Made by a program: the position numbers and the translations under genes
Notes under the pieces: generated by a model
What the model saw: the letters and a program-made list of their open reading frames with translations, nothing else
Databases searched by the model: none
What the model was told of the DNA's origin: nothing
Virus record (IMG/VR): IMGVR_UViG_3300023179_000009
Location: 372,001 to 436,000 of that record
Length of the DNA stretch: 64,000 bases
Reading direction: 5' to 3' (one strand)
Shown here: piece by piece, positions 2,208 to 24,709 of the stretch
Layout: the number at the start of each line of letters is the position of its first letter
How positions within the stretch are numbered: the stretch's first letter is position 1

Positions 2208-3266
2208 ATGATAAAAAGAGTTTTACTAACTGGTCACGGAGGATTTGTTGGCCATCATTGTCTAGAATATTTTCTTGAAAAAACTGATTGGGAGATTGTT
2301 TGTATTGATAGTTTTCGACACAAAGGAACCTGTCGAAGGGTTGTAGAGATATCGAACGACAATCCTAGAGTAAAAACTTACAAACATGATCTTTCAGTTC
2401 CTATAGATGCTCAATTAGAAAATTTAATTTTAGAGCGTAAAGCAATTTCCTATGGGGTAGAACACAAGCCAATCCATATTATTATAAACATGGCTTCTGA
2501 GAGTGCGGTTGAACGATCCACCCAAGATCCTGTCGCTTGTTTAAAAAATAATTATGATATTGCTATTAATATGCTTGAGTTTGCAAGAAAATGTAGTCAC
2601 TTAGAACAATTTATTCAAATTAGCACTGATGAGGTTTACGGCGAGGTTGCTCCAAACAAATCACACAAAGAGTGGGATCCGATCTTGCCATCAAATCCCT
2701 ATGCCTCTTCAAAAGCAGCACAAGAGTCTTTGGCAATCGGATATTGGAGAACTTATAATTTACCAATTGTGATTACCAACATTATGAATATTATTGGGGA
2801 AAGACAAGATCAAGAAAAGTTTTTGCCAAAAATAATTCGTAAAATTCTTTTACAAGAAGAAATGCCAATTTATGCAGATTCGGAGAGCGATATAGGTTCT
2901 AGAGTTTATTTATATGCGAAAAACGTAGCTGATGCTTTGATTTTTTTATCAAACAAAAAACCAGCCACGTATCAAAGTCTTTTAACAGAGAGGCAAAGTT
3001 ATGATATAAGACCTGATCGTTATAACATATGCGGTGATGTTGAAATAAATAATTTGGATATGGCAAAACTTGTTGCAAAGATTATGAAAAAAGAATTAAA
3101 ATACAAACTAATAAAAAGCGAGTCCGCTCGTCCAGGATATGATAGAAGATACATGTTGGACGGTTCTAAAATTAAACAATTAGGATGGATTGCTCCTTTT
3201 GGTTTTGAAGAATCTTTAGAAAAAATAATAAATTGGACTTTAAAAAATATTCATTGGGGAGTTTGA
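2208..3266 (+). CDS. rmlB: dTDP-glucose 4,6-dehydratase (extended SDR)
   Basis: TGHGGFVG NAD-binding motif, ASESAV, ISTDEVYG, YASSK catalytic motif, RPGYDRRY. Confidence 0.88.
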   Translation: MIKRVLLTGHGGFVGHHCLEYFLEKTDWEIVCIDSFRHKGTCRRVVEISNDNPRVKTYKHDLSVPIDAQLENLILERKAISYGVEHKPIHIIINMASESAVERSTQDPVACLKNNYDIAINMLEFARKCSHLEQFIQISTDEVYGEVAPNKSHKEWDPILPSNPYASSKAAQESLAIGYWRTYNLPIVITNIMNIIGERQDQEKFLPKIIRKILLQEEMPIYADSESDIGSRVYLYAKNVADALIFLSNKKPATYQSLLTERQSYDIRPDRYNICGDVEINNLDMAKLVAKIMKKELKYKLIKSESARPGYDRRYMLDGSKIKQLGWIAPFGFEESLEKIINWTLKNIHWGV

Positions 3267-4835: not shown

Positions 4836-5918
4836 ATGAAAAATAAAATTTTGATATTTTTTTCTTTTGTTTTATTATCTCTTCAATTATTTTTATATTT
4901 TGTTGAGATCAAGAACCCCGCTCCAAAGCCAGATGTAAAACCAATTCCTCAAGAACAAAAGTCTCTTCCTCAAATAGAAACAAACATTTCTAACCCATTC
5001 CCAGGATACCTGGATTATGACAAAATAGTTTTATTGTTAAAAGAATGGAATTCACAATCCGAAGACATCACAGAGTTTGGGGTTTATGGAAAAAGCACTA
5101 AAAATCAAGATTTAGTATATTTGAGATTGAGAAATAAAAGAATCAGTCAATCAGCGCAGTTGCCGGTGCTTGTTACAGCATGTATTCACGGAAATGAACC
5201 ATTATCAACTGCAACTATGATGTGGTATTTTGGAAATATTTTAAAAAATTATAAAAATAATTATGAAAAATTATTAGAAACAAGAGATATTTATTTTGTT
5301 CCTGTGGTGTCTCCTGATAGTTATCCTCATAGCCGATATGTCGATGGGGTTGATCCCAATAGAAATTTCCCCGGATTAAACAACTCTGATAAGCAATCTG
5401 TTAAGCCAATTGCCTCCATTCAAGACTTGTTTTTAAAAATTAAACCAAGAGCAGTACTGTCAGGGCATACTTGGGGTAGGGTTTTTTTAATACCTTACGG
5501 CGATCAAATGCAAAAATGTCCTGATCATGATCAATTTATGGGTATAGTATCGGAGATGGGTAGGTTGTCAAACTATAGATACATAAGAGCTTGTGATTTG
5601 TATATGGCAAGTGGGCGATTAAACAATCCCCCCATAAGAACTTATGGAGAACCTAAAGGAGAATACAAAACTTTAATGCCAATTTATGGAACAGAGGTGG
5701 ATTGGTACTATCGCAATGATTCTTTTGCTGTCGTGATGGAATTTGGCACACATCAAAGAAAACCAACCTTAGAAGAAATAAAATTTGAATACAATAGAAC
5801 TAATGATGCTTTTTTGTATTTTTTAGAAAAAGCACCCACAACTAAACTTGATCCTAGTCGTCTACCAGTTCAAGCCTTGAAACCAAAAAATATCGATGAA
5901 ACATTTAGAGACGAATAA
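4836..5918 (+). CDS. M14 zinc carboxypeptidase with N-terminal membrane anchor or signal
   Basis: IHGNE (HxxE), DPNRNFP, SGHTWG third ligand, VMEFG catalytic Glu; basic then hydrophobic N-terminus. Confidence 0.88.
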   Translation: MKNKILIFFSFVLLSLQLFLYFVEIKNPAPKPDVKPIPQEQKSLPQIETNISNPFPGYLDYDKIVLLLKEWNSQSEDITEFGVYGKSTKNQDLVYLRLRNKRISQSAQLPVLVTACIHGNEPLSTATMMWYFGNILKNYKNNYEKLLETRDIYFVPVVSPDSYPHSRYVDGVDPNRNFPGLNNSDKQSVKPIASIQDLFLKIKPRAVLSGHTWGRVFLIPYGDQMQKCPDHDQFMGIVSEMGRLSNYRYIRACDLYMASGRLNNPPIRTYGEPKGEYKTLMPIYGTEVDWYYRNDSFAVVMEFGTHQRKPTLEEIKFEYNRTNDAFLYFLEKAPTTKLDPSRLPVQALKPKNIDETFRDE

Positions 5919-6771: not shown

Positions 6772-8262
6772 TTACTTTTTTGACATAAAGCGAATTTGAT
6801 TTTGAAATGAATCAAGTTCTAATTGCTTTTTTCTTTCATCTGCTAGTGTTGAATCGACGTTATTTGTAAATGGATCATAAATGTCTAAGAAATCATCGGA
6901 AACTTCACTTTCTCCATCTTTATAAACAAATATTTTTATTCTTGGTTGTCTTGTGTAATTTAAAAAAGCATCCACCAGATCTGGCTCTACTTTACCTATT
7001 TTTACGACAAAATCTTTTAGTTTTCTTGGAGGTAATCCGGCTGTCACGAATCCGTTTGTTAAACTTGACAACTCATCTGCCTCAATTGAGCCACTTAAGC
7101 CCAAAGACTTAATCAAAAAGACTATCTTGTTAAGGTCTTTTTGATCTATTTCTAAATCCATCAATGATTTTGGATCGTTCATTCTCAAAAGATAAGCCAA
7201 AGCCATTTGCTTGTCGCCTAACTCGGATATTTCTTTGGGAAAATTTGCATCGAGTATTTTGTTCGGAAAAACATGGTTTAAAATTCCCAAGTCATTACAT
7301 GTGGAAAGATATTTTCTTGAGTCAACTTCTTCTTTGTCCATTCCTTTTTTAAATTCATCCATCATGTATTTTCTATCCAACCCTCTCAATTTTTCACTTA
7401 ATTTTTTAACTTTTTGTTTCTCTTCATCAGAGACCTTGGAGGCATCGCCATACAAAGTTAGCATCCTAGCGTATCTCAGTATCCTTGAAGGATCTTCTTC
7501 TAATTTTTTCTCTATGTCTCCAATAGAATTTATTTTTCCGGCTGCTAAGTGATGCATGCCGCCAAAAAAATCATACAAATCTTTATTGGGTCCATTGTCA
7601 TTATTCAAAAGAACATACATTCCGTTTATTGTAAAATCTCTCCCTGCTGCATCATCTTTTTGAGTGCCCAACTCAGGGTCTTTGTCGATGAGACCCTTGG
7701 GGGTTTTTGTGAAAACTTCTAAGGTGTATTCATCGTCATTTACTTTAATACCAAAGACAAAAGGACGACCATTCTTATTCTCCCTCTGTACCCAAAAGTA
7801 TTGGTTGTTTCCCTTTTTAATATTTGGGCTATCTTTTAAAGTTTTTAAATCTCCCAATTTATTAAAAAAACTAAAACCATTTTGTTTAAGTAGGTGGTAA
7901 ACCTCGTCAGGCGAAGCACTTGTTGCTAACTCTACATTTCTAGGTTTTTTATTAAGTAGATGATCACGCACAGATCCGCCGGTTAAAAATAATTTTTTAC
8001 TAGTTATCTTAACAGGTTTTTCTCCACCTGTGTTTTCGTCTCTAGACCAACCCCAATTTGCACCTTGCTTAAAAGCTCTAACGATGGGTGCTAAATTTTT
8101 GTTTTTACCATAGTTCTCTGACTTTGGATCGTCCGATATTACAAAAGGAGAAAATTCATTTCCATCTCCTAAAGAAACCTTTGACCCAACGGGTTTTGAA
8201 GACTCTATATTTTCTTGTTGTGATTCTTTTAAAATTTTAAATTCAACAAAAGATTTTTTCAT
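6772..8262 (-). CDS. CCA-adding/poly(A) polymerase class II nucleotidyltransferase homologue with altered catalytic site
   Basis: LTGGSVRD, DAAGRDFTINGM, DFFGG and EEDPSRILR motifs are present; the usual DxD position reads N-V-E. Confidence 0.85.
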   Translation of the reverse strand: MKKSFVEFKILKESQQENIESSKPVGSKVSLGDGNEFSPFVISDDPKSENYGKNKNLAPIVRAFKQGANWGWSRDENTGGEKPVKITSKKLFLTGGSVRDHLLNKKPRNVELATSASPDEVYHLLKQNGFSFFNKLGDLKTLKDSPNIKKGNNQYFWVQRENKNGRPFVFGIKVNDDEYTLEVFTKTPKGLIDKDPELGTQKDDAAGRDFTINGMYVLLNNDNGPNKDLYDFFGGMHHLAAGKINSIGDIEKKLEEDPSRILRYARMLTLYGDASKVSDEEKQKVKKLSEKLRGLDRKYMMDEFKKGMDKEEVDSRKYLSTCNDLGILNHVFPNKILDANFPKEISELGDKQMALAYLLRMNDPKSLMDLEIDQKDLNKIVFLIKSLGLSGSIEADELSSLTNGFVTAGLPPRKLKDFVVKIGKVEPDLVDAFLNYTRQPRIKIFVYKDGESEVSDDFLDIYDPFTNNVDSTLADERKKQLELDSFQNQIRFMSKK

Positions 8263-8310
8263 TATTATGACCTATTTTTTACTAGATTATTTAGTGTATT
8301 TTTAGAATAT

Positions 8311-8691
8311 TTACAGCGGGGGTGCAAGATTTAATTTTGTCAATACATAAGCCGCCAAAATAACCCAAACTATTTGAATTAAAAAATTTGCAATATTTTT
8401 CCAATTTTCATTATGGACTCCTTGGTTCGCTTCGACTTTAGAAATTTGAGACTCTAATTCTTTTATTTTTTTTTCTAATAGATCATTTTGTTGAATGAAT
8501 GTTTCTAAATTATATATTTTATTAAAAATCTCAACAATCTTATGATTATGGTAATCTATTTTTTCTTCTAGCTTTTTTTGTTTATCATTGATTATTTTTT
8601 CACGTTCATCTATTCTGTTGGTTAAGTCAAAAAGTTTTTGAACACTTTCGCTTAATTGCGATATTAATTGGAAACTTGTATCTTCTGCCAT
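8311..8691 (-). CDS. coiled-coil protein with C-terminal transmembrane helix (holin/XhlA-like architecture)
   Basis: heptad-rich body followed by IANFLIQIVWVILAAYVL. Confidence 0.55.
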   Translation of the reverse strand: MAEDTSFQLISQLSESVQKLFDLTNRIDEREKIINDKQKKLEEKIDYHNHKIVEIFNKIYNLETFIQQNDLLEKKIKELESQISKVEANQGVHNENWKNIANFLIQIVWVILAAYVLTKLNLAPPL

Positions 8692-8731
8692 TTGGTTCTC
8701 ATAATAAAAAAACTACTATATATATATTAAT

Positions 8732-9244
8732 ATGAATTCCAAAGAAACCATAATAATAGACGAAAATTCATTAAACAAAAACTTGCCATTAGAAGAAGAT
8801 TTTGACATGGATGTTGAAATGATTTTGCCAACCATGAATGTTAGCAAAGAATTGACATCCGGCCCTGAGGATAAGGAGTGCATTGTTAAAGATGAAAATC
8901 TTCTTGGTTTGTATGACGAAATTTTAACAAATTGTAGAGATGATAGAAGCAAAGTAGATGAAATATTATCTACTTTTTTAGAAATGGTTATTAATGATGG
9001 AGATGCAAGTTCGGCAAGCAAAGAAGCTATAGTTAATTTAATGAAAATAAAATCAGACACAGCAGATAAGATGTCGAAAGTTGCCGATCTGATGACACGG
9101 TTAAAATTAAAAGATAAAGATACATTTCCTAGATATCTTGCAGCACAGCAAAATAATAAAGTTGTTATAGAAGGAAGCAAAAGAGATTTGCTAAAATCCA
9201 TAAATAAAATTGCTAATAAAAAAGGTAAAAGTAATGAGTCATAA
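8732..9244 (+). CDS. hypothetical protein at the start of the late/structural operon
   Basis: 170-aa helical ORF; AT-rich ACTATATATA box just upstream. Confidence 0.7.
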   Translation: MNSKETIIIDENSLNKNLPLEEDFDMDVEMILPTMNVSKELTSGPEDKECIVKDENLLGLYDEILTNCRDDRSKVDEILSTFLEMVINDGDASSASKEAIVNLMKIKSDTADKMSKVADLMTRLKLKDKDTFPRYLAAQQNNKVVIEGSKRDLLKSINKIANKKGKSNES

Positions 9245-10532
9245 ATTTAATAAATTAATCTGGTTGGCAGAGCAGAATCCCGGCGATTTTGGCGCAGCAG
9301 CAGATCCAACAGCCGGTGGAGTTCCTATGACTCAACCTGGAACTCCTGGTGATCCCATGGGGCAAAATCTCACCCCTGCAAACGCACCAAACGCTATGAG
9401 TGTTGATCAGCAACCGGGAGAAGAACAAGACCTGTCAAACGATCCTGATTATCCAGATATGCCCGAGGACCAGGAGCAGGATGAGTTTGAGGTGTGGAAA
9501 ATTAAATTTATTAAAGAATCCATCAAAGGGGATGCTAATTCTTTAATACAAAAAATACTCAGCGTTAGAAATCGTGAATTAGAGCCGGTTCAAAGAAAGT
9601 TTGTAGAAGACAATTTAGATATATGTTTTTTAAGACAAAATTCAAACGTATTGCAGGCATCTAACCAAATTAGAAAAAAAATAAAACAAGATTTTGATCG
9701 AACTAATCCGGCGACGACGTTGGTAAGACACATAACCGACACACTAGACGAAAGCCCTTTATTAAACGAAGTCTATGTTAAATTATTGGGGTTGGGCGGT
9801 GCCAAAGGTGACCAACACCGAAAATTTGTTGGATCGCTAACTGGCTCAGTTCAAGTCGGAAGCGGTGGACAAAACGAGGATCTTGTTTTTGAAGAACAAG
9901 ATTATTCAATAAGAGTAAGCACAAGATTTAATGCTCGTTGGGGCGATGTCAATCTTGGGAGATGGTATTTAAGAAAAGACGACCCTGAACGTCATTTGAA
10001 AAATGCCGAAATAGACAGGTTGGAGGGTGGTAGCCCCGAAGAAAAAGATGTTCTAAGAAGAAGAGTGGTGATAGAATCAATCGCTGAGTTTTATAAGGAG
10101 AGGGCTTTTATCATAAATGTTGTTGCCCAAGACGGCACAGTTTATCATCTTGGTTGGGATTTGGGAACTTCTTTAAAGTCTGCTTTTCTTGATGGAAAAC
10201 TCGTAGTTAGGACAAAAAGCAATGATGCTGAAGAATGTTTTATAGATGAAGAAGGATCTGTGATTAATGTTCCTAATATGAATATTTATTATGTAAAGGA
10301 GTCTGCCGAATTAAATTCAGATGGTTCCGCTGAAATAGAGGAGATAGAGTTTATATCTCATCGTGACGGGGTGCTGTACTTAACAGCACAACTGGATTTA
10401 ATAAAAGAAGCCTCCACAACGCTTCAAGGAATTTTATTTAGAGAAACTTTGTGGCAAGGAAACCCTACAGATATTCTTAAAATTATGCGTTGCGTTCCAA
10501 GTTCTCCAGAGATGCTTTTAAGACAATGCTAG
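9234..10532 (+). CDS. hypothetical, probably virion or morphogenesis protein
   Basis: long ORF; ATG at 9234 behind AAGGT; P/G/Q/D-rich N-terminal linker. Confidence 0.7.
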   Translation: MSHKFNKLIWLAEQNPGDFGAAADPTAGGVPMTQPGTPGDPMGQNLTPANAPNAMSVDQQPGEEQDLSNDPDYPDMPEDQEQDEFEVWKIKFIKESIKGDANSLIQKILSVRNRELEPVQRKFVEDNLDICFLRQNSNVLQASNQIRKKIKQDFDRTNPATTLVRHITDTLDESPLLNEVYVKLLGLGGAKGDQHRKFVGSLTGSVQVGSGGQNEDLVFEEQDYSIRVSTRFNARWGDVNLGRWYLRKDDPERHLKNAEIDRLEGGSPEEKDVLRRRVVIESIAEFYKERAFIINVVAQDGTVYHLGWDLGTSLKSAFLDGKLVVRTKSNDAEECFIDEEGSVINVPNMNIYYVKESAELNSDGSAEIEEIEFISHRDGVLYLTAQLDLIKEASTTLQGILFRETLWQGNPTDILKIMRCVPSSPEMLLRQC

Positions 10533-10541
10533 AAGGTAAAC

Positions 10542-10727
10542 ATGACTCACATAGAAATACAAGAAGAAAAAAAATCTTTAAAACTTCATTATGAAGCAAT
10601 TAAAAAATATTTGGGAGAATTATTGTTAGAACACAATGCAAAAGAGGACAATCCTGAGGATTTTGCATATTTTTCGAGAAAATTTGAAGAAACACGTAAT
10701 TTGTTGAGGAAACACGGTGGTAAATAA
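10542..10727 (+). CDS. hypothetical protein
   Basis: 61 aa with an AAGGT RBS; fills the operon gap. Confidence 0.55.
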   Translation: MTHIEIQEEKKSLKLHYEAIKKYLGELLLEHNAKEDNPEDFAYFSRKFEETRNLLRKHGGK

Positions 10728-11217
10728 ATCTTTTGGATCTTTTGTTGATAAGAAAAAAAGAGAGTCAATTCGTCAATTGGAATTGATGAAAAAAATTCTT
10801 GAACAAAATAATTTTAAAGTAAAAGACTTTTTAAATGAACAAGACTCAGATCCTTACATTTTTTGTTATAATCCTTTAAAAAACAGCAGTTTTGAGGGCA
10901 TTAGAGTTTATAAAATAGGCAATGAATTGGCCTTTAGAATTCAAAAAGAATCACAAACCCACCCGTATGGATCGGCATACCCTTTGCCAGTGGAGTCTAT
11001 GTTCAATGACTTTTTGACAGACAGTGATGGTGATGAGAATGAAGTTTCAAAACAATTAATTGAAGCTATTGGCAAGGAAATAAACAATTTTTTTGAAAAG
11101 AGTTCAAAAGCTGAAGAATCTTCTAGAAAACTTTCATATAACAAAGATAGTGTCGGCAGTGTTTTAGTTAGATCGACAGGTACTGATTATGCCTCTTTAA
11201 TATACAATAAAAATTAA
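10717..11217 (+). CDS. hypothetical protein
   Basis: 166-aa ORF within the operon. Confidence 0.7.
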   Translation: MVNKSFGSFVDKKKRESIRQLELMKKILEQNNFKVKDFLNEQDSDPYIFCYNPLKNSSFEGIRVYKIGNELAFRIQKESQTHPYGSAYPLPVESMFNDFLTDSDGDENEVSKQLIEAIGKEINNFFEKSSKAEESSRKLSYNKDSVGSVLVRSTGTDYASLIYNKN

Positions 11218-11218
11218 A

Positions 11219-11719
11219 ATGGTCGGATTATTCAATGATTTTTCTAATATTAAAAATTTAGTTAATAATCAAAATCAATCGGTTGGTGTTTTTTCAAAAG
11301 GATCTTTAGTTTCCTTTGAATATCCTAGAAGTTATGCGGTTATTCCCAACGCTATACACGACCCAAGGCCGATGTTAATAGTGACCGATGTTTGGTCGCC
11401 AAACTATATAAGAGGAGTCAATTTACATTATTTAACCTTCCCTTATATTAAAAAAATATTAGAAACATGGGCTGGAAATCAAACTTTTAGTTACTCAAAT
11501 ATAAAGCAAGATAAATACGTTTCTTTGGCTTTTAGAATGTATGCCTTTCAGGGAATTATTAGACCAAAAAGACTAGATAGTGAGTGGTTAAAAGCAGTAT
11601 TGCAAAGCGTTAGAACATTTGATGCTGGAGAAGTTGAGAAAATCAGATCAAGCATAGAAAACCAAATTCAGCAGAGATTTCAAAAGAAAGCAAGCGAACT
11701 TTCTCAAAATCTTGAATAG
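11219..11719 (+). CDS. T4 gp2-like DNA end protector protein
   Basis: FEY...HDPRPMLIV...GVNLHYL motif typical of the gp2 family. Confidence 0.65.
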   Translation: MVGLFNDFSNIKNLVNNQNQSVGVFSKGSLVSFEYPRSYAVIPNAIHDPRPMLIVTDVWSPNYIRGVNLHYLTFPYIKKILETWAGNQTFSYSNIKQDKYVSLAFRMYAFQGIIRPKRLDSEWLKAVLQSVRTFDAGEVEKIRSSIENQIQQRFQKKASELSQNLE

Positions 11720-11749
11720 TTCATGAAATGAAAAGTGAATGGAGATTAA

Positions 11750-14700
11750 GTGGCGACAGACCTGTATGGTCGGAGTATAGGAGACAACGTATCGGTTAAT
11801 CAAGTTAACCAGCAATTACTTTCACCGACCCAAGAAACAAAAAGACCAGACGCTCAAGAAGTTAATAACGATCCTGATAAAAAGGAATCGGCGTTAGAAA
11901 ATCTGTACGAAGCCATTAATCGTGTTGCTGAAAAAATAGACTCAAATGCATCAAAAGATTTAGAAGAATCAAAAAATTGGTCCAAAAATATAATTGATTT
12001 TCATAAAGATTTTAGAAACACAAGCAGATCCGACGAGTCTGGTCAAAAAACACAAACTGGGTTTTTGGATCTGGCTTCTAAAGCAATTCAAAATTTATGG
12101 GTGGCTTCTCAATCTCAAAATACAATCTGGGTTGGTATAAGCAAATTATCTAACAACGCCGTCCAAGAAATATCAAAATCTTTTAGTATGTCTGATTGTT
12201 GTGAAGCCTTGGGAGAAGCAACAGCCACTGTGCGAGGTTTGGATAATTTAAATTCAGGTGTGTCTGAAGCCTCAAAAACTGTTTTGTCTGAAGCTGGGGG
12301 CGGGGGGAGAGGAACAAATTGGGGAGGGGGTGATGACGACAGCGATGATGGTGGTGACGGTGGCTCAAGAAGAAGAGGCGATTCTTCTGACGCCTCTGAT
12401 TTTGAACTTCCTGATGCTGGGGACATGACTGGTGTGATAGCAAGAATGTCAACCATAACTGGCTTGATAAGTTTGGCGGCTAATAGTTTTGTTGATCTTC
12501 ACAGGAGTGTGATTAAAGCTCTTGATATAGACCCAATTCAAAAAATATTTGACGGCCAAATTCTTGAACATAATAATTTTCGTGAAAGTATTCGTGCTTT
12601 AATTCATGAGCAAGAAGGTTTTGGCGCAAGTAATAGACAGATAGAAAAAACATTTATAAATTTGGAATCATCAATAAACGCTGCCGGTGTTGGATCTGCT
12701 AAATTTAAAACAATGTATCTTAAAAATCTTGAACGTGGGTTAAGCTTGGCCACCGCTGAAGATAACAGGTACGTGGATGCTTTATCTGCACAAAAGAAAG
12801 GATTCACAATAGAACAAAAAGAAAGTGCATTGAGAGAAAGAAAAGTCAATAGATTAAAGAGCATACAAACCACTGCGTTGTCAACGGCTTCGTCGCTTCA
12901 CATGAGTTCAGATGCGATGAATGAACTTTTTATGAATTGGCACATGAATCTTGGTTTATCAGAGCAAAGTTTGGCTGAAATTGGCTCTCATATGAAAAAT
13001 GTTTCCAGATCAACAGGGGTTACTGGAAGTCAGTTGGAGAAAGCGATGATAAGTGCCGATGGTGTGATGAAAAATTTAAAGAAAGCTGGCATGGTGAGTA
13101 CTGATACTGCAAAAAGAGTAACCGAATTTATGGCCGCTGCTCAAAAACATGGGTTTGAAGGTGCGGCTGAATTGATGAATGTTTTAGGTGGAGGAGAAAC
13201 TTTTCATGATTCTAAATATAAACTTTTTTTGGGTAATGCGGCTAGATTTTCAGATAAACCAGAACAAGGTGTCCGAGATCTTGTACTTGGGAACACAATG
13301 AACCGATCTGGGGGTATGGAAAATCTTTTCGGGGGGGCTGAGCGGTTTGTTAGATCCCAGTTGTCTGGATTTGAAACAGCTTTAAATAGCGTTGGATTAA
13401 AATCTTCAACACTAGATGTTACAAATTTAAGTGAAGTTATGAATAAATTGCGAGCCGGTGGCAAACTTGAAGAAGCAGAAGCTTTAAAGAGAAGGTTCAA
13501 AGGTTTGGGAATAGAAATAGGAGAAGTTGAACGTGCTTTAAAAACAATGCAAGAAGAAACTTTGTCCTCATCAAAAAGGATTGACAAATATAGTAAAGAA
13601 TTAGAAAGTATGAAGGCTCAGGGCTTAGAAAAAACAGATGCTTATAAGCAGATTCAGAAAAAATTACTAGAGGCTCAAACAGGCCAGAGTCAGGATGTTT
13701 TTGGCAGAATAAAAAGCGTAATGGACAACAAAGAAGGTAAAACCGGGGGACAATTAGAGAAAGAATTAAAAGATTCACTAATACAAGTTTTGGGCGATGA
13801 AAAAGCAGCAGCAGAGTGGCAATCCAACCTTCCTGCAAAAGCCTCTGAGGCTGTGTCTCAAATGAGAGAAAGAGCAAAAGCTGAGGGTTTAAATTTTGAT
13901 GATATGCTAAAAGAAAAAGGAATCACAGGGGGAGAATCTCAGTTAACAAAAGGTTTACTAGAGGGTGATGCCTTATCTAATCAAGCCATGACTGAAATAA
14001 TGCAACGAATTAGTAAAAAAGAAAAACAAGGCGAGGATCCGATAACGGATATTAAAGGAATTTTAGAAGAAATACACACAACGCTTGCTCAAAAATTAGA
14101 CAATGTGGGCTTTGGATTGTCGGATATGATTGTTAAAATTTTATATGTAGCTGGTTATTTGGGCGGGATACTAATGACTGTGGCGAGTGGGATCTTAGCC
14201 TTAAGAATGCTACAAAATATTCCAGGGCTGCTCTCTGGTATTTCTGGTGTCTTCGGAGGTTTAAACAAGGCTTTAGGCAACCCTCTTGAAAAAATATTTG
14301 GAAAGGGTGGCAAAGGCCCACTTGGTGGATTGCTAGGAGACTGCTTGCCGGTTTGCCCGCCAAGCGGTGGTGGCGGTCAAATGATGCCAAGAAGACCAAC
14401 AGGAGGATCGCCAGTTGTACCGCCATCTCCAACAACGGGACCGATGACCACTGTGAGTCCATCTGGAAGACCAAAAAATACTACGGTTTTACCCGGAGGG
14501 CCTGATTATGGCGGCGGAGGTTGGGCTGGCGCTCAGGGGACACAATATCAATCGCCAACTGTTAGAGATGCGGCCACGGGCCAAGTTACAAGAAGAGACA
14601 TGAGTCGATCAGATCGTCGTGCCAATGCAGAGCGTTATCTAGATGCCAGAAGGGCCGCTGGCCAGTCGGGTCGAGGCTTTGGGCCAAGAGCAGGTAGTGG

Positions 14701-17700
14701 CATTCGAAGAGTTGCTCCGCAAGGAAAGGGCTGGATGGGCCTTGCTGGAAAAATTGCAAACTTCGCTATGGCACACCCAACACTAACTGGAACCGCAATA
14801 GGAGCAACAACAGGAGCAGTGCATGGCTACGCAACGTCTGATGAAAAAGGTTGGGGTGCTGTAGGAGACTCTCTTTTTGAGGGTGCGGTTGGAGGGGGCA
14901 TAGGAGCAGCCGCTGGTTACGGTGCTGGTCGTTTAGGAGGAGCAGGAAAAGGCTTACAGGCTGGTGGCCTACCGGGAATCGCTGACGGAGCAATGGATGT
15001 TGTTGCTTCTGGAGCAAACATGATGGGAATGCCAGGATTTGGATCCGATTGCATGCCTGTTTGGGTTTGTAACTTTGGAGAAATGGGCGGAATGGGAGGA
15101 TTGTTACCGGGAATGGGTGACGGAGGAATGGCACAAACTGCCTTGGACACATTAAATACAGTCGATATGGCTTCCGATGTTGCTGGCATGATGGGTAAAG
15201 GAAAAAATGTTGCTCAAGTTGTTGACAAGGCCGATGATGTTGCCAAGGGTGGAAGTTGGTTAAGTAAAATGTTTGGTGGAGGAAATAAAGCAGCAACCAC
15301 AGTCGCCGGTGGTGCCGATGATGTTGCCAAGGGTGGAAGTTGGTTAAGTAAAATGTTTGGTGGAGGAAATAAAGCAGTAACCGCAGTCGCCGGTGGTGCC
15401 GATGATGTTGCCAAGGGTGGAAGTTGGTTAAGTAAAATGTTTGGTGGAGGAAATAAAGCAGTAACCGCAGTCGCCGGTGGTGCCGATGATGTTGTCAAGG
15501 GTGCGGGGCTATTGTCGAAAATTCCAGGTGCTGGCTTAGCCAAAGGAGTAGGAAGTTTATTGGGAAAAGTCGCTGCTCCCTTGCAACTTTTTACGGGTGC
15601 AATCACAGGTGCCATGGACGCAGAGTCTGCTGGCAGAACAACCGCAGAAGGGGCTGCTTATGGCGCTCTAACAGGTGGCGCTCACAAAGGATCTTTTGCT
15701 AGCGAAGCTTTAGGGATTCAAAAGGGAAGTGTGGCCGACGAGTCTCTGGGAATTGCTGGTGGTGCTGCTTGGGGAGCAACGTTAGGCGCTGGTGTTGGCA
15801 CTATGTTGGCACCCTTCACTGCTGGCATTAGTATTCCTGTTGCTGCGGCTGTGGGTGGTGTGATTGGTGCAGGAGCAGAGTTAGTGAAAGTTTTTACCGC
15901 CGAAGAATCTTCGATGCGAGACGCTGTGACTGGATTTGCTTCCAGCATCGGTTCAACAATCATGGAGTTGCCAGGAACTATTGGTGGTGCATTCCAAACT
16001 GTTGGCTCTTATTTGGGAGAAGGCGCTCACAGCATTTATGCAAGCATCACTGGTTTTGCTTCTAGTTTAGGATCCACTTTTACTTCTGGAATTACAAGTG
16101 TTGCAAATGGAATAGGTGGTTTTGCTTCTAGTTTAGGAAACTCTGTTTCAGAGAGTTTTTCAAGCACTGCTAAAGAGAACTGGGATAGAATGTTACAGGG
16201 TGCTAGTTTTTCTGGCGCTTTGGGACAAGTAACTGGCGGCATCGTCGATGTTGTTAATGGAAACTTAACACAAGGATTAACAAAAGTAGGCTTGTCTGGC
16301 GTGGAGGCTTTTGGAGCATTAGGCCAGACAATTTTAGGTGCCGCATCTTCTTTAAACCCATTTAGTTGGTTTAAAAACAAAGAAAAAACATCAGCCAAAG
16401 AAACAGAATCTTCCCCAGAAAAAAAACTTGCAGAAACAGCAAATAAAGAAACACAAAAAACACAACAAGATGTCATGACCCAATCAGCAGAAAAACTACA
16501 AGAAGCAGCGGTTGGTTTAGACATTGGAAAAACTGAGCAGGATTTCAAGGCAATAAGCGAAGCATCTTCTAAAAAAGATATCGATCTTTCAAATGCTATG
16601 GTTGCTAGTTTTGGCAATGTTGGCGATTCAAAAGAAATTTCAAAAGCTTTATCAACTCAAAACTCAGCGGTTTTTAATTCTATTTTGGCCGAGCAAGAGT
16701 CTTTAATAAAATCTATATCTCAAAAACGTGACGCCAAAAGTTCAGGCGGTGTGACGAGCGACTTAGGTAGCAAGCAGGGCTTTTTTGATTCTAACGCAAA
16801 AGGATTTTTAGCAAATGCTGCTTTAAGATCTAGTGACCCTATAGCCTACAACAGTTTGCAAACAGGCACAACTTTGCAAACGCCCGACGGTGTGAAAGGC
16901 TTGATGTCTGGACAAGAAATACTTGTGAAAGAAATATTTAGTGGATTTGAAAGTTCTTTAAATAATGTTGGAGTTCAATCAGCCACAATAGATGTTGGTA
17001 ATTTAAGTGAAGTTATACAAAAATTACAAAAAGGGGGTCAGGCGGAGCAGCAAGCAGCAACATCTTTACAAAGACAGTTTGAAGCTTTGGGTACTAATGT
17101 TGGAGAGGTGGAAAATAATTTTAAAATTATGAGTCAATCTTCAAAAACACCACAGGATTTATTGGGTGATCTTAGCTTTAAGCTAAACGACATGAACAAA
17201 CAAGGATTGCAAAACACTGATGAGTATAAGTCAATTCAAAAACAAACATTAGATTTGCAATCTGATTTGCAAAATTCTTCTGATGTTGTTCAAAAACAAT
17301 CAACTCCAGTTGAGGCAACGACTTCATTACAAGGAGTTTTTGAAAAGACACAAGCGTCGGAGGCTTTGACCTCCAACATAGACACTGCTATCAAATGGCA
17401 AAAAATTGAGCCAAGCGAACAAACACTAGCAGGAGAATTGTCTGGGGATTCGAAAGATAAAAATAATTTTACCGTTTATGACCAATCTGTTGAGTCGATT
17501 TTGTTTAAAATATTTGATCAATTAAAATCTTTTAATTTAACTAATATTTTTGAAAAAGATTCAAGTTTGGCGATGATGAATCTTGATCATGTATCTGTTG
17601 TTGATTCTCAAAAAAAATCTATAGAAAATAAAAGACAATTTGAGGGTTTAGACACGCCGATTCGCACATTTGAGCAGATGCCTGAATCTCTTAAAGATTT

Positions 17701-19867: not shown

Positions 19868-19880
19868 ACATAGGTGATCA

Positions 19881-20810: not shown

Positions 20811-22421
20811 ATGAGTTTAATTTTGTGCGGAGGTGGCGAAAATTTCACGGCTGGCTTAGTGCCAAGAACCGATTGTATAGAGAAATATAGATCTCCAGGA
20901 TCACCTTATAAGTTTCCAGAGACTGGTTTTTCTTTGGCCCCATGGGTCGCAATTGATTTTGTTGACCAATCTTATCAAGGAGGCGGAGCGGCAATTACAG
21001 TTAGTAACAGGTCTTCTGAGGTTACAAATCCAAAAAATTGCGCTGTTATTAAGAGTTTTACTTTGGGACACACAGACGGTACTGATTGTCGAGTTGTAAT
21101 TCACGATACACAAGGTGGTGTTTTTGAAGAATTTATGAAGCACCTTGTTAAGGACTGGTATTGTTTAAAAGACGCAAACCCAGCAGCTTTGTTGATGAAA
21201 GTGCAATTTGGTTGGGTTAAAAGTAATTGCCAAAATGAGATTCCCGTGTCGAGATCCCCTTGTTATTTTATAATGGTTTCAAATGTCGAAGCAAATTTTG
21301 CCGAGGGCAAAATCATGTTTGAACTAACCGGGCAGGATAGTTGCAATTATATGTTTAACGGCAGTGTTTCTGGGGAAAAAGGAGGGACGGGAGCGTCTTC
21401 GATGTATCTTCTAGACGCTTTACAAGAAACTCTATGTAAAGGAGACCCCCCAAATATCGGCTCTGTTAGCTTCAGAATACCCACAGGGCGTAATAATTAT
21501 GAAATATCGGGTAGAGATGATGTATTTAAAATTGACAATCCACAAGCAGAGTATCCCGATGAAAAAAAACGTGGTCCCGCTGGCAAATGGTTGCCTCAAG
21601 GAAGAAATAAATTAGATGTTGCTTGCGCTTGGGTCACAGAAAGTTTATCTAAGAATGGTAAAGCCTGGGTGCCAAGGTATGACAGTACATCTGAAAAAGG
21701 AGAATTAATTTTTTGGGAAGCATCAAAATCTGATTGCGAAAACCAATCTGATGACTATTGGGACAGATATAACTTGGGGTCTTATATTGTAAACGGCTCA
21801 AAATCAAGTCCTGTTTTAGAGTTTAATCCAAAAATAAAATGGGATTTTGGATTAATTACGGGAAATGGCGGAAATTCCGGTGATGATCGATTAAATTCAA
21901 TGGGAACAGAGGGTGCAAAAAATCCAGGTCTTGAATGCCCTTCTTTATCTGCTGATAAAGTAAAAGGATCTGGAAATTCTACAACCACTAATAAAACAGA
22001 GTCTCAACAAGACCGAGGCGATAATGATAAAAAAGTAGCTGAGACGGACGCAAAACATAAAAAAACTCTTGAAATCAGCCACGGTCCTTTTGATGCCGAT
22101 TTAATTGTTGTAGGAGATCCAACATTTTGCCCTGCATTTCAAGCTGTTGGTGTTATGTCTATATCTATAATATTAATTAATCCTTATCATATAGTCCCAG
22201 CAAATGCTAGTTGTGGCGAATGGTTGTCGCAACCAGTGTGTAATCCAATTCTTAGTAATAAAGCTTGGATAATAAAAGGTGTCGGACACACAATTGAAGC
22301 AGGGAAATACTCTACTAGAATAAGTGTAACGCTCCCCGTACCCGGCCTTAATCACAAAAAATCTAATGATGGGGGAAGATTGGGAGCTTGGACCGATGGC
22401 TGGAAGCCGCCTACTTGTTAA
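20811..22421 (+). CDS. baseplate hub protein (gp27/gpD-like)
   Basis: KVQFGW, ADLIVVGDP, WIIKGVGHTIEAGKYST; lies between the gp53-like and gp5-like genes. Confidence 0.6.
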   Translation: MSLILCGGGENFTAGLVPRTDCIEKYRSPGSPYKFPETGFSLAPWVAIDFVDQSYQGGGAAITVSNRSSEVTNPKNCAVIKSFTLGHTDGTDCRVVIHDTQGGVFEEFMKHLVKDWYCLKDANPAALLMKVQFGWVKSNCQNEIPVSRSPCYFIMVSNVEANFAEGKIMFELTGQDSCNYMFNGSVSGEKGGTGASSMYLLDALQETLCKGDPPNIGSVSFRIPTGRNNYEISGRDDVFKIDNPQAEYPDEKKRGPAGKWLPQGRNKLDVACAWVTESLSKNGKAWVPRYDSTSEKGELIFWEASKSDCENQSDDYWDRYNLGSYIVNGSKSSPVLEFNPKIKWDFGLITGNGGNSGDDRLNSMGTEGAKNPGLECPSLSADKVKGSGNSTTTNKTESQQDRGDNDKKVAETDAKHKKTLEISHGPFDADLIVVGDPTFCPAFQAVGVMSISIILINPYHIVPANASCGEWLSQPVCNPILSNKAWIIKGVGHTIEAGKYSTRISVTLPVPGLNHKKSNDGGRLGAWTDGWKPPTC

Positions 22422-22456
22422 TATTATTTTTACAAACAAAAGAAAGATTTAATACT

Positions 22457-24709
22457 ATGTCTCTAAACCAGAATAGTCCATTCACGCCATCGCAATCCAA
22501 CTCGGCAGATTTTTCTAAATTAATGGATAGCGTTTTTAATAGATTGTTTTCTTTGGAACAAGCCGTAAATGCAATTGGCTATAGCAGCAAAGCCTCAAAA
22601 AAAAGAAGATTTCCCCAACGTAGACAAGCAAACATTGTGCAAAATTTAACCAGGGCCCTTTGTGTCGAGACTGTTGATCCTTGGAAAATTAATCGTGTGA
22701 GATACTTTCATCCTCTGCTTCATGACCCAAAATCAAATTTGTTTTCCCTACCTTTTGCTAAACCAATTTCTGCCATGGGTGGTTTTGATGATTGTGGTTT
22801 AAACTGGGTTCCACCTGCTGGTAGTACTATTATGATTTTGTTTGAATCTGGGAACGTTGACTCTGCATTTTATCTAGGAACAGCTTGGAGTAAAGATCGA
22901 AGGCCCGGTGGACAAGATATAATGGACATTTTTCCTTCTCGTGAATGGCAGCGTGTTTATCAAGGACACAGAAAGGGATATTTGGTTGGACCAGACGACG
23001 AGTCTCAAGTTTACCCTCCCTGGAACACAGAATCTTACAACGGAAGCGACATTTACGATATTAAAAAATTTGTTTTTGACCCCAATGAACAAAAAAGAAC
23101 AACTTATCCAAACATTTATGGATTCAAAACTCCCGAAAAACATATGTTAAAAATGGTTGACGGGAACGCAAAATGTAACAGGAGATGGAAAAGACTGGAG
23201 ATAATGTCGGGTTGTGGAAATTGGATGATCTTCAAGGATGATCACCTTCATTACGGTGGCCAGTGGGCACATCCAAGTTGCCCTCCGGACCCTGGTGGGG
23301 GTAATGTTGATGTCTGTTCTATACACCAAGATAGACTTCCTTATTTTAGTAATTTCCATGGAGAACCTATCGAGAAGGGTGCTGGTTGCGAACCAAATTG
23401 CGAAGGAAAAAGCAAAACTCAATGTTCTAGAATTTTGGGAGGACACACTTCTACTCCATGCGACCCAGAGACAAAATATTGCAAATCTCAAGGTGGTGCG
23501 AATCCTTTTTTTAAACATAAAAATGAATGTCGTCCATATAAGGGACCACAAACTCCACAAAACAACAAATGTGATTTGCCGCAATCAGGCATTCAATTTT
23601 TATCCATATCTGGTCACACTTGGGTAATGGACGACTCTGTGGAGGAACCCAAGGGTAAGCCTGAGTGGGAGCGAAGTATGCAACCTTTTGATTTTGGTTG
23701 TAGCGATTTATTTCAAGGAAGAACATATTGGAAAAGTGCAACTGGTCATTCGATAATGATGAGCGATGTTGAGAAAAAAGGCTTATGCACAGGAGGAAAG
23801 CCAGGAAGGCCAAATATAAATTATATTAAACTTCTCTCTGCTTCGGGAAATAGAATAGAGTTAAACGATCACACAATTCCGGTGTGTAGGGGCGGAGAAG
23901 ATCGTGGAATTCACATGCAAAGCACATCAAACCATGTGATTAAAATGATCGATCATTTAGTTAGTCAATGTTCTCCTTGTAGGCGTGAAGGCGGAAAACC
24001 AATTCCAAATGCAACAAGAGCATATATTCAAATAAGATCAGGGTACGGACTGGAAATGAGATATAATGACGACTTCAGTCAACAAACAACACAAAAACAA
24101 TGGATACAAATTTTGCACCCACAATGTGTTAGTCCTCAGTCCGACAAGGCTTGTAATTCTCTACCGAGTTGTGGATACAGGGGACCGCATATTTTAAGAT
24201 TTCAAGGTCGCCCCAAGGGTCAAGCTGGTTGCATTTATCTCCGGGCTGGAGGTCATTCGGTTCGTCAAACTTATGATTTTGACGTTGTTTTAGTTGGCGA
24301 CAAAGAATGTAATCCTTCCGATAAAATTACTTATGTTTCAAGAAAACATATTAGGGGTTGCGAAGATGTGGACTTTAGATATTCCGGGAAAAGACACGTT
24401 TTTTTTGCGGAGAAAAGAATTTTATTACTTGCTGGACGAGATTGCCCGCCCAAGCCTCCTAAAAAATGCAAAGGTCCATGTGTTTATAGTGTTATAATAG
24501 CACGATGTCCTGTTATATGTCCGTTAACTGGTATCGTTCATTGGACCCAAAAATCAATGAGCGAAAGAGTTTTTGCCTCTGGTTGGCATCCGTGTCCTGC
24601 TTGTTTGCCTTGTAGGATACCTGGATGTGAACACCCAGAGCCAGAGCCACCGAATGTAAAGATAGACACAGGTATAGGTATAATAGAAGTAAATAATAAC
24701 GTTGATTAA
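22457..24709 (+). CDS. central spike protein (gp5/VgrG/GpV OB-fold), Cys-rich
   Basis: DPWKINRVR, WVPPAGSTIMILFESGNVDSAFYLG OB-fold signature, repeated S.SGH...MDD beta-helix units; start set at MSLNQ. Confidence 0.75.
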   Translation: MSLNQNSPFTPSQSNSADFSKLMDSVFNRLFSLEQAVNAIGYSSKASKKRRFPQRRQANIVQNLTRALCVETVDPWKINRVRYFHPLLHDPKSNLFSLPFAKPISAMGGFDDCGLNWVPPAGSTIMILFESGNVDSAFYLGTAWSKDRRPGGQDIMDIFPSREWQRVYQGHRKGYLVGPDDESQVYPPWNTESYNGSDIYDIKKFVFDPNEQKRTTYPNIYGFKTPEKHMLKMVDGNAKCNRRWKRLEIMSGCGNWMIFKDDHLHYGGQWAHPSCPPDPGGGNVDVCSIHQDRLPYFSNFHGEPIEKGAGCEPNCEGKSKTQCSRILGGHTSTPCDPETKYCKSQGGANPFFKHKNECRPYKGPQTPQNNKCDLPQSGIQFLSISGHTWVMDDSVEEPKGKPEWERSMQPFDFGCSDLFQGRTYWKSATGHSIMMSDVEKKGLCTGGKPGRPNINYIKLLSASGNRIELNDHTIPVCRGGEDRGIHMQSTSNHVIKMIDHLVSQCSPCRREGGKPIPNATRAYIQIRSGYGLEMRYNDDFSQQTTQKQWIQILHPQCVSPQSDKACNSLPSCGYRGPHILRFQGRPKGQAGCIYLRAGGHSVRQTYDFDVVLVGDKECNPSDKITYVSRKHIRGCEDVDFRYSGKRHVFFAEKRILLLAGRDCPPKPPKKCKGPCVYSVIIARCPVICPLTGIVHWTQKSMSERVFASGWHPCPACLPCRIPGCEHPEPEPPNVKIDTGIGIIEVNNNVD

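What the first reader, a model, noticed from the sequence alone, without database searches (positions are those of the whole stretch)
6772..8262. CCA-adding-enzyme homologue with catalytic DxD changed to NxE and a capsid-targeting-like N-terminus
Seen: motif A reads GGSVRDHLLNKKPR-N-V-E-LATSA (codons at 7930-7938), RRD reads GRD, and the templating EDxxR (EDPSR) is retained. The ORF is intact and starts MKKSFVEFKILKES. Established: class II nucleotidyltransferases need both DxD carboxylates for metal binding. Inference: this is a pseudo-enzyme or altered-chemistry enzyme, possibly packaged and injected, that may bind or shield tRNA ends or decoy tRNA-targeting defences.
Basis: partly seen in the sequence, partly recalled or inferred. 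Interest (0 to 1): 0.72.

Follow-up and report, generated by a model that had tools for sequence, protein, structure and literature searches.

The report
Catalytically degenerate CCA-enzyme paralogue, huge phage
A huge freshwater T4-like phage carries, beside a normal tRNA CCA-adding enzyme, a second full-length copy that has lost two of its three metal-binding carboxylates; the loss is conserved in more than 100 related phage proteins, so the copy probably works by binding rather than catalysis.

Summary
Window 6772-8262(-) is an intact 496-aa class II nucleotidyltransferase (Pfam PolyA_pol; AF2 model Z 19-23 to CCA enzymes over head, neck, body and tail). Motif A reads N109-V-E111 (7930-7938), RRD reads GRD, and EDPSR is kept.

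It is not an error or a private mutation. Contigs from four studies agree. Of 121 orthologues (48-96% identity), 105 have N and 113 have E, with synonymous codon variation. dN/dS against a 96% orthologue is 0.04.

The protein belongs to a phage-specific subfamily with a roughly 90-aa N-terminal extension. That subfamily lost DxD about nine times on my tree, while 65/65 canonical representatives keep it. A 35% syntenic orthologue (LR756511) keeps DxD/RRD and is that phage's only copy. This genome has a second, canonical HD-fused copy and 12 tRNAs, none with an encoded CCA.

The N-terminus resembles the T4 capsid-targeting sequence. The genome encodes T4-type prohead protease and capsid protein, and the motif is enriched at ORF starts. 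Packaging and the shield/decoy role remain inference.

Verdict: a new, conserved pseudo-enzyme (or rewired) variant of a known family.

The parts
6772..8262 (-). Whole gene: 496-aa class II nucleotidyltransferase paralogue (P0001), stop codon included
8224..8262 (-). Residues 1-13, MKKSFVEFKILKE. T4 capsid-targeting-sequence-like N-terminus: aromatics at 5 and 8, and L11-x-E13, a possible prohead-protease site
   Evidence: Family conservation is F5 111/121, [YF]8 120/121, L11 108/121 and E13 116/121. T4 IPII/III start MKTYQEFIAE. Motif enrichment at ORF starts.
8182..8223 (-). Residues 14-27: poorly conserved linker, predicted disordered
   Evidence: pLDDT below 50 for residues 13-21. Mean top-residue frequency 0.43.
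7993..8181 (-). Residues 28-90: family-specific N-terminal extension (LGDGN, SDDPKSE.YGKNKNLAPIVRAFK.GANWGWS, KPVKI). With motif A it is the most conserved part of the protein
   Evidence: 32 of 63 columns are at least 95% conserved. It folds confidently only in the full-length model and poorly on its own.
7915..7980 (-). Motif A: GGSVRDHLLNKKPRNVELATSA
7930..7938 (-). N109-V110-E111 in place of the catalytic DxD
7705..7731 (-). Strand EYTLEVFTK. T180 (7723-7725) sits where canonical enzymes have the third catalytic Glu. E182 (7717-7719) is an extra acidic residue typical of this clade
7624..7653 (-). Motif B: DAAGRDFTIN. The first Arg of RRD is replaced by Gly; R208, D209 and N213 are invariant in the family
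7546..7572 (-). Motif C: DFFGGMHHL. Canonical is D..GG..DL; here D238 is His
7465..7497 (-). Motif D: EDPSRILRYAR, the nucleotide-templating EDxxR, retained
6775..7272 (-). Body and tail domains, present in full but net acidic
   Evidence: VIA alignments reach residue ~488. Net charge -4/-2 against +3/0 in canonical enzymes.
9210..10532 (+). Conserved, divergently transcribed neighbour of unknown function (about 432-440 aa). It is syntenic with the CCA-like gene in LR756511 and in Logan contigs
11219..11719 (+). gp2-like DNA end protector: start of the adjacent virion/ejection gene block
   Evidence: phrog_429, E 1e-7
22388..24709 (+). gp5-like baseplate hub (Phage_base_V)

Best explanation
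The gene encodes a full-length paralogue of the class II tRNA CCA-adding enzyme that has given up normal two-metal nucleotidyl transfer. Only one of the three canonical carboxylates survives, as Glu (N109, E111, T180), and the first Arg of RRD is lost. The fold, the triphosphate-binding GGxVRD, the R-D of motif B and the base-templating EDxxR are kept. A roughly 90-aa N-terminal extension is extremely conserved.

The most likely mode of action is non-catalytic. The remodelled head pocket, together with the extension, binds a nucleotide or an RNA 3' end without extending it. Real CCA addition for the phage's 12 CCA-less tRNAs is left to the second, canonical HD-fused enzyme of the same genome, or to the host enzyme.

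The N-terminal 13 residues look like a T4-type capsid-targeting propeptide. The protein is therefore probably loaded into the prohead, trimmed by the T4-type prohead protease, and delivered with the DNA.

Shown here:
- family membership and fold;
- loss of the catalytic residues;
- clade-wide conservation and purifying selection;
- recurrent loss of DxD in this subfamily;
- presence of a canonical paralogue;
- presence of a T4-type head-maturation system.

Inferred only: lack of activity, the ligand, packaging, and the biological role.
For: **Family and fold**
- Pfam and PHROG hits.
- AF2 model pLDDT 86.4.
- Foldseek E 1e-10 to 1e-12 and VIA Z 19-23 to human, Bacillus and Thermotoga CCA enzymes and E. 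coli PAP, over residues 25-488.

**Catalytic residues**
- Alignments to 3AQK and human TRNT1.
- All 65 canonical representatives have D.D, RRD and EDxxR.
- In this clade the third-carboxylate position is acidic in only 71 of 121 members.

**Selection**
- N105/121 and E113/121.
- Asn is coded by AAT and AAC, Glu by GAG and GAA, among orthologues.
- dN/dS 0.040 against a 96%-identical orthologue with dS 0.46.
- The motif A region and the N-extension are the most conserved segments, 0.87 and 0.85.

**Evolution**
- The N-extension clade has support 0.997.
- 18 of its 76 leaves keep DD.
- Fitch parsimony needs at least 9 state changes, and there are 10 maximal all-degenerate clades with varied replacements (NE, NN, ND, DH, EH, KH, GE, KE and others).
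- The D-x-E members nested inside the NE clade mostly lack the third carboxylate too.

**Division of labour**
- The own genome has two PolyA_pol genes. One is canonical and HD-fused.
- LR756511 has only one, and it keeps DxD/RRD.
- None of the 12 phage tRNAs encodes CCA.

**Packaging**
- T4 IP N-termini and the CTS rules.
- Peptidase_S77, E 9e-26, and gp23, E 9e-87, in the genome.
- The motif occurs at 21 of 628 ORF starts against about 3.5 expected.
- The gene lies beside the gp2-like to gp5-like virion block, as ipI does in T4.
Against: - No biochemical data exist. Asn and Glu can still ligate Mg2+, and the Pol-beta superfamily pattern allows [DE]h[DE]h.
- Many clade members carry acidic residues at 111, 180 and 182, so a rewired metal site is not excluded.
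- Position 109 is restricted to N/D/H rather than free to vary. That suggests a specific chemical role.
- Body and tail are net acidic, which is unlike canonical tRNA-binding surfaces.
- The CTS-like spacing differs from T4 by two residues.
- CTS-like starts also occur on proteins with no obvious reason to be packaged, such as an FMN reductase.
- No T4-type late-promoter signal was found.
- Co-occurrence with a canonical copy could be checked in only one near-complete genome. The related IMG/VR contigs are fragments.
Confidence: 0.5

Rival explanations
1. It is still an active nucleotidyltransferase with a rewired metal site or altered chemistry. N109, E111 and E182 (plus E/D180 in many relatives) would bind one or two metals, and the enzyme would add nucleotides, or do a related reaction, on a different substrate or with different kinetics.
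For: - The active-site region is the most conserved part of the protein.
- Position 109 is limited to N/D/H and position 111 to E/Q/D, all possible metal ligands.
- A clade-specific acidic residue appears at 182 in 103 of 121 members.
- GGxVRD, the R-D of motif B and EDxxR are retained.
- The superfamily pattern tolerates Glu at these positions.
Against: - 65/65 canonical class II representatives keep D.D.
- The third carboxylate is only 59% acidic in the clade, and it is Thr in this protein.
- Members with A or S at 182 exist within the NE clade.
- Sister lineages replace the same residues with K, G, S, T and H, and go on to lose EDxxR. That is the pattern of catalytic decay, not of re-tuning.
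Confidence: 0.22
2. It is a cytoplasmic, non-packaged accessory subunit or regulator. For example, it could be a pseudo-enzyme partner that presents tRNA to the canonical HD-CCA enzyme, as in enzyme/pseudo-enzyme pairs such as ADAT2/ADAT3. The N-terminal motif would then be unrelated to capsid targeting.
For: - A canonical paralogue exists in the same genome.
- Orthologues of both genes occur in related phage contigs at similar divergence.
- CTS-like starts also occur on metabolic-looking proteins.
Against: - The subfamily, with its N-terminus and extension, also exists as the sole, catalytically intact copy in LR756511. The extension and N-terminus therefore predate any partnership.
- The genome has the T4 head-maturation machinery.
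- No computational support for a heterodimer was obtained, though that test gave no verdict either way.
Confidence: 0.18
3. It is an artefact or a decaying gene: a sequencing or assembly error, a private mutation, or a pseudogene on its way out.
For: None found.
Against: - The sequence is identical in contigs from four independent studies.
- NxE is conserved across 121 orthologues down to 48% identity, with synonymous codon turnover.
- dN/dS is 0.04.
- The ORF is intact and the fold is predicted with confidence.
Confidence: 0.01

Closest known systems
Class II CCA-adding enzymes (Geobacillus stearothermophilus 1MIV, human TRNT1 4X4W/8CBM, Thermotoga maritima 3H37/5HC9)
   Same: - Head, neck, body and tail architecture (VIA Z 18-23 over about 350 aligned residues).
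- Pfam PF01743.
- Motif A GGxVRD, the R-D and N of motif B, the D..GG of motif C, and EDxxR of motif D.
   Different: - DxD is NxE, the third catalytic Glu is Thr, and RRD is GRD.
- The motif C Asp is His.
- A roughly 90-aa N-terminal extension with a CTS-like start is added.
- Body and tail are net acidic.
- The subfamily is phage-specific.
E. coli poly(A) polymerase I (3AQK/3AQL)
   Same: Best sequence match in the PDB (E 1e-13 alone, 2.5e-20 with the profile). The motif A context is almost identical (GGxVRDxLLxKKPx-x-x-x).
   Different: PAP keeps D-F-D and RRD and is catalytically active. It has no N-terminal extension of this kind.
The syntenic orthologue in uncultured huge phage LR756511 (508 aa), and other DxD-bearing members of the N-extension subfamily
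   Same: - Same N-terminal motif (MRTTFLEFMGLKEA).
- Same extension, length and neighbouring gene.
- 35% identity.
   Different: It keeps KDYDL and ARRDF, and it is that phage's only PolyA_pol gene. It is presumably an active enzyme and represents the ancestral state.
T4 internal proteins IPI/IPII/IPIII (capsid-targeting sequence, cleaved by gp21, injected; IPI* blocks a host restriction enzyme)
   Same: - N-terminal M-K-x-aromatic-x-E-aromatic ... [LI]-x-E motif.
- The genome has a T4-type protease, scaffold and capsid protein.
- The gene lies near the gp2-to-gp5 block, as ipI does.
   Different: - It is a 496-aa enzyme-fold protein, near neutral, not a small basic protein.
- The spacing of the LxE differs by two residues.
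- Packaging is untested.
Inactive nucleotidyltransferase-fold domains that act by binding (N-terminal pseudo-catalytic domain of TUT4/TUT7; OAS3 domains I/II) - recalled from general knowledge, not tested here
   Same: Pol-beta-fold modules that lost their catalytic carboxylates but are kept for RNA or partner binding.
   Different: They belong to different NTase families, are eukaryotic, and are domains within larger active proteins.

Membership tests
Class II tRNA nucleotidyltransferase / poly(A) polymerase family (PF01743) | Head-domain profile match above the curated cut-off | tested here: met
   60.4 bits against a cut-off of 23, residues 91-244
Class II tRNA nucleotidyltransferase / poly(A) polymerase family (PF01743) | Head-neck-body-tail fold | tested here: met
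   AF2 pLDDT 86.4. VIA Z 19-23 over residues 25-488 to 4X4W, 1OU5, 3AQL, 1MIV and 5HC9.
Class II tRNA nucleotidyltransferase / poly(A) polymerase family (PF01743) | Motif A GGxVRD (triphosphate binding) | tested here: met
   GGSVRD. G95, G96 and R99 are invariant in 121 orthologues.
Catalytically competent CCA-adding enzyme / PAP | DxD metal-binding carboxylates in motif A | tested here: not met
   N109-V-E111. 65/65 canonical representatives have D.D.
Catalytically competent CCA-adding enzyme / PAP | Third catalytic carboxylate, the E of [FY]E[IV][AT]T[FL]R | tested here: not met
   T180 aligns with that Glu. E182 lies two residues downstream.
Catalytically competent CCA-adding enzyme / PAP | Motif B RRD | tested here: not met
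   G207-R-D. The first Arg is G88/S31 in the family.
Catalytically competent CCA-adding enzyme / PAP | Motif D EDxxR nucleotide template | tested here: met
   E256-D-P-S-R260; R263 and R266 are conserved.
Catalytically competent CCA-adding enzyme / PAP | Adds C, C, A (or poly(A)) to an RNA 3' end | not testable with these tools
   Needs an enzyme assay.
T4-type capsid-targeted internal proteins | N-terminal 10-19-residue propeptide with aromatic residues three apart and an [LI]xE cleavage site | tested here: inconclusive
   MKKSFVEFKILKE has F5, F8 and L11-K-E13. T4 has Y4, F7 and I8-A-E10. The pattern is conserved in orthologues, but the spacing is two residues longer.
T4-type capsid-targeted internal proteins | Genome encodes a gp21-type prohead protease and a gp23-type capsid | tested here: met
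   PF03420, E 9e-26; PF07068, E 9e-87
T4-type capsid-targeted internal proteins | Protein present in virions with a processed N-terminus | not testable with these tools
   No cultured relative. Only uncultured records matched in the phage collection.

The most novel reading that the evidence does not exclude
Huge T4-like phages package a catalytically dead CCA-adding-enzyme homologue into the capsid through a T4-type targeting peptide and inject it with the DNA. There it clamps or caps tRNA 3' ends, or mimics their binding partner, in the first minutes of infection. This would neutralise host defences that attack or modify the CCA end, before any phage gene is expressed. The repeated, independent loss of catalysis in this subfamily would then reflect selection for a tight, non-turnover binder.
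Probability: 0.15. Interest if true: 0.85.

Novelty: new variant of a known kind. Interest (0 to 1): 0.62.

Why it matters
- Phage 'tRNA nucleotidyltransferase' genes are routinely annotated as CCA-adding enzymes and counted as translation-boosting or tRNA-repair functions (for example).
- Here a large, well-conserved subfamily from huge phages turns out to lack the catalytic carboxylates, and to have lost them repeatedly.
- These annotations are therefore probably wrong for more than 100 protein clusters.
- A full-size tRNA-enzyme scaffold has apparently been re-used for something else.
- If the capsid-targeting reading holds, it would be the first tRNA-enzyme-derived internal or ejected protein.
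- It would also be a simple, testable case of pseudo-enzyme evolution: an active ancestor, intermediates (DD_SRD, then DE_GRD, then NE_GRD) and an active paralogue all available in sequence.

Tried and rejected
- **Sequencing error or private mutation.** Rejected.
- **Single-protein scan of IMG/VR.** Found nothing. The alignment-based scan found 8 fragments.
- **Co-occurrence of the degenerate and canonical copies in other genomes.**
  - All IMG/VR relatives are fragments, each with one PolyA_pol gene, so there is no conclusion.
  - Only the own genome (two copies) and LR756511 (one, DxD) are informative.
- **Heterodimer of the protein with the CCA part of the canonical paralogue (complex prediction).** No verdict, score 0.00. 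It is not evidence either way.
- **N-terminal extension folded alone.** Low confidence (pLDDT 65), so no fold search was made on it. It seems to be part of the head rather than a separate domain.
- **Atlas feature search on residues 22-92.** Gave only unnamed clusters.
- **T4 late-promoter motif TATAAATA.** Not enriched: 9 found against 6 expected, and none upstream of the gene.
- **Pfam on other ORFs with CTS-like starts.** Mostly no hits. Those found were HD+PolyA_pol, DUF5662 and FMN_red, so the set neither proves nor disproves a packaging signal.
- **Literature searches.** No description was found of a catalytically inactive or virion-borne phage CCA-enzyme homologue.
- **Model coordinates.** They were not available to scripts, so distances between N109, E111, T180 and E182 could not be measured.
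Full report
**1. The observation**

The ORF at 6772-8262 on the minus strand is intact, 496 aa, and begins MKKSFVEFKILKES. It matches the Pfam poly(A) polymerase/CCA head domain (PF01743, E 2.9e-16, 60.4 bits against a cut-off of 23) and PHROG 2244, 'tRNA nucleotidyltransferase'.

phmmer against the PDB aligns LTGGSVRDHLLNKKPR-N-V-E-LATSASPDEV with E. coli PAP [29 protein letters not shown]. It also aligns DAAGRDFTIN with DAQRRDFTIN, and EEDPSRILRYAR with REDPVRMLRAVR.

N109 is 7936-7938 (AAT) and E111 is 7930-7932 (GAG).
- One thing was missed. The third catalytic carboxylate of the family is the Glu of [FY]-E-[IV]-[AT]-T-[FL]-R.
  - It is present in essentially all canonical representatives and in human TRNT1 (FEITTLR).
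  - It aligns with T180 of this protein.
  - An unusual Glu follows two residues later, at 182.
- So only one of the three canonical carboxylates survives, and that one as Glu.

**2. Not an error, and not private**

- The sequence comes from a 458,813-bp IMG/VR virus record of 35% GC.
- The gene is found nearly word for word in lake and freshwater metagenomes from several studies.
- Logan contigs of four runs, at depths of 79x, 24x, 5x and 5x, show no difference at 7930-7938.
- A search of 5.8 billion proteins returned 215 relatives. The best 120 are full-length (about 500 aa) at 48-96% identity, on contigs up to 693 kb.
- In their alignment:
  - position 109 is N in 105, D in 10 and H in 3;
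  - position 111 is E in 113, Q in 7 and D in 1;
  - the first Arg of RRD is G in 88 and S in 31.
- Among orthologues with DNA in hand, Asn is coded by both AAT and AAC, and Glu by both GAG and GAA.
- Against a 96%-identical orthologue (L005), dN is 0.019, dS is 0.46 and dN/dS is 0.040.
- The protein is therefore under strong purifying selection, and the N-x-E state is itself maintained.

**3. Fold**

- An AF2 model built on 68 orthologues is confident: mean pLDDT 86.4, pTM 0.79.
- It matches class II CCA-adding enzymes and PAP from about residue 25 to 488. Foldseek gives E down to 6.5e-12 and VIA gives Z 19-23. The matches include tRNA complexes (8CBM, 5HC9).
- Head, neck, body and tail are all present.
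- Residues 13-21 are disordered.
- The N-terminal extension (28-90) is confident in the full model but not on its own (pLDDT 65). It probably packs on the head domain rather than forming a separate domain.

**4. Where the protein sits in the family**

An exhaustive HMMER search over 1.84 billion representatives gave 8266 hits. I aligned 141 full-length sequences and built a tree.

- All 65 sequences without the N-terminal extension have GG..R.D / D.D / RRD / D..GG..D / EDxxR.
- The sequences with the extension form one clade (support 0.997, 76 leaves).
- Only 18 of those leaves keep D.D.
- The rest carry NE, DE, HE, NQ, DQ, NN, ND, NH, NT, DH, EH, KH, KE, KN, KD, GE, GD, SD, TD or DN. Most also lack the first Arg of RRD, and several also lack EDxxR.
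- With an all-DD outgroup, parsimony needs at least nine changes. There are ten maximal clades with no DD member.
  - Several of these have DD sisters: P0127/P0126, P0140/P0141, and P0146-P0149 beside P0144-P0165.
  - FastTree topology at this depth is imperfect, so the exact number is soft. Multiple independent losses are clear.
- On the path to the window's clade the tips read DD_RRD (P0127), DD_SRD (P0123), DE_GRD (P0110), then NE_GRD.
- Inside the NE clade the third-carboxylate position is acidic in only 71 of 121 members.
- The occasional D-x-E members mostly lack the third carboxylate as well. They do not rebuild a catalytic triad.

**5. What is conserved instead**

- Within the NE clade, the most conserved segments are the motif A region (mean top-residue frequency 0.87) and the N-terminal extension (0.85; 32 of 63 columns are at least 95% conserved).
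- The neck (0.67), body (0.70) and tail (0.58) are less conserved.
- The former active-site region is therefore not decaying. It is being kept for something.
- The body and tail hold the tRNA acceptor and T arms in canonical enzymes. Their net charges are:
  - -4 and -2 in this clade;
  - +3 and 0 in canonical representatives;
  - +1 and +1 in DxD-bearing members of the extension clade.
- Family median pI is 6.8, against 8.5 for canonical representatives.
- This is the main reason I do not simply assert canonical tRNA binding.

**6. Genomic setting**

- The genome holds a second PolyA_pol gene (G000:C1:209332-211494, 720 aa).
  - It has an N-terminal HD domain and canonical DIDL, KRRD and EDxxR motifs.
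  - Its orthologues (50-60% identity) occur in other IMG/VR phage fragments.
- The genome has 12 tRNA genes, and none encodes a 3' CCA. A working CCA-adding activity is therefore needed and is available.
- The nearest record in the phage collection is LR756511 (595 kb, uncultured).
  - It has a syntenic 508-aa orthologue at 35% identity, with the same kind of N-terminus and extension.
  - That orthologue has KDYDL and ARRDF, and it is that genome's only PolyA_pol gene.
  - This is what one expects if the degenerate copy is affordable only when another source of activity exists. It rests on two genomes, though, because the other relatives are fragments.
- In the window the gene lies between sugar-modification and peptidase genes and a virion block:
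  - upstream, an epimerase at 2208-3266 and an M14 carboxypeptidase at 4836-5918;
  - a conserved, divergent 440-aa gene at 9210-10532;
  - a gp2-like DNA end protector at 11219-11719;
  - a 2705-aa giant protein at 11750-19867;
  - a gp5-like hub at 22388-24709.
- The local order is kept in L005, L006 and LR756511.

**7. The N-terminus**

- T4 IPII and IPIII begin MKTYQEFIAE, and IPI begins MKTFKEFTST (read from NC_000866).
- In T4 the first ten residues suffice for capsid targeting. Residues 4 and 7 matter for targeting, and residues 8 and 10 for cleavage by gp21 (PMC9026906).
- The internal proteins are otherwise diverse anti-defence proteins (PMC3012670).
- The window's protein has F5, F8 and L11-K-E13.
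  - In the family these are F 111/121, Y/F 120/121, L 108/121 and E 116/121.
  - A variable, disordered linker follows.
- The genome encodes a T4-type prohead protease (PF03420, E 9e-26), a scaffold-like protein and a gp23-type capsid protein (PF07068, E 9e-87).
- A loose version of the motif occurs at 21 of 628 ORF starts, against about 3.5 expected from internal positions.
  - These include near-perfect T4-like starts such as MKTFNEWIKIKE, MKTFQEWLNEN and MKSFNEWLVES. The last of these is the canonical HD-CCA paralogue.
It is not proof:
  - the spacing to LxE is two residues longer than in T4;
  - some carriers look metabolic;
  - no virion data exist.

**8. Interpretation**

The best reading is a conserved pseudo-enzyme, or at least an enzyme that has abandoned the standard two-metal mechanism. 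It derives from a phage-specific, N-terminally extended CCA-enzyme lineage. It keeps a nucleotide/3'-end pocket and is probably delivered through the capsid.

- I put about 0.5 on the core of this: non-catalytic for CCA addition, acting by binding.
- The main rival is a rewired but active site, at about 0.2. In its favour:
  - positions 109 and 111 are restricted to potential metal ligands;
  - an acidic residue appears at 182;
  - the superfamily pattern allows Glu.
- Against that rival:
  - the third carboxylate is variable;
  - sister lineages show obvious decay.
- A cytoplasmic partner or regulator role is possible, at about 0.18. The single complex prediction gave no verdict.
- Error or pseudogene is excluded.

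**9. Novelty**

- Huge-phage CCA-adding enzymes are known and are annotated as such (PMC7162821, PMC7824862).
- In the literature available to me I found no description of a catalytically degenerate, N-terminally extended subfamily, or of a capsid-targeted one.
- I class it as a new variant of a known kind.

Noticed in passing
Whole genome G000. In the window: 6772-8262(-) and 53505-53705(+).: 21 of 628 ORFs start with a T4-CTS-like motif, M[KR]xFx[EQ][WF][LI]xE, against about 3.5 expected. Most are small proteins of unknown function. They may be a large set of internal or ejected proteins.
   Followed up: partly
G000:C1:209332-211494 (outside the window; locus L018): A second, canonical CCA-adding enzyme, fused to an N-terminal HD domain (720 aa), with a near-perfect T4-like start, MKSFNEWLVES. 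It is a candidate tRNA 3'-end repair enzyme.
   Followed up: partly
G000:C1, 12 sites between 161547 and 343846 (outside the window): 12 tRNA genes, none with an encoded 3' CCA.
   Followed up: yes
window 11750-19867(+): A giant 2705-aa ORF next to the gp2-like gene. It contains a stretch of about 50% GC at 14-16 kb in a 35% GC genome. It also has tandem repeats: 84 bp x3.3 at 15230-15503 and 234 bp x2.1 at 18376-18867.
   Followed up: no
window 6772-24709, compared with T4 NC_000866 73591-79686: The gene order is a CTS-bearing gene, then a gp2-like end protector, then a gp5-like hub. This echoes T4 ipI-57B-57A-1-3-2-4-53-5.
   Followed up: no
window 4836-5918(+) and 2208-3266(+): An M14 zinc carboxypeptidase with a hydrophobic, signal-like N-terminus, and an NAD-dependent sugar epimerase/dehydratase. 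Both lie just upstream and are syntenic in relatives.
   Followed up: no
window 8311-8691(-): A 126-aa coiled-coil protein with a C-terminal hydrophobic helix and a weak PHROG hit to 'hemolysin' (XhlA-like). It lies directly upstream of the CCA-like gene, on the same strand, and is conserved in relatives.
   Followed up: no
L006 16269-16799 and 9547-10155; L001 5241-5903: A related phage contig encodes SmpB. A HAD_SAK_1-type phosphatase follows the CCA-like gene in L006 and in LR756511, but not in this window.
   Followed up: no
NE-clade alignment, residues 331-496 of P0001 (window 6775-7272): The body and tail domains are net acidic (-4/-2), whereas canonical enzymes are net basic or neutral. 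No explanation was found.
   Followed up: partly
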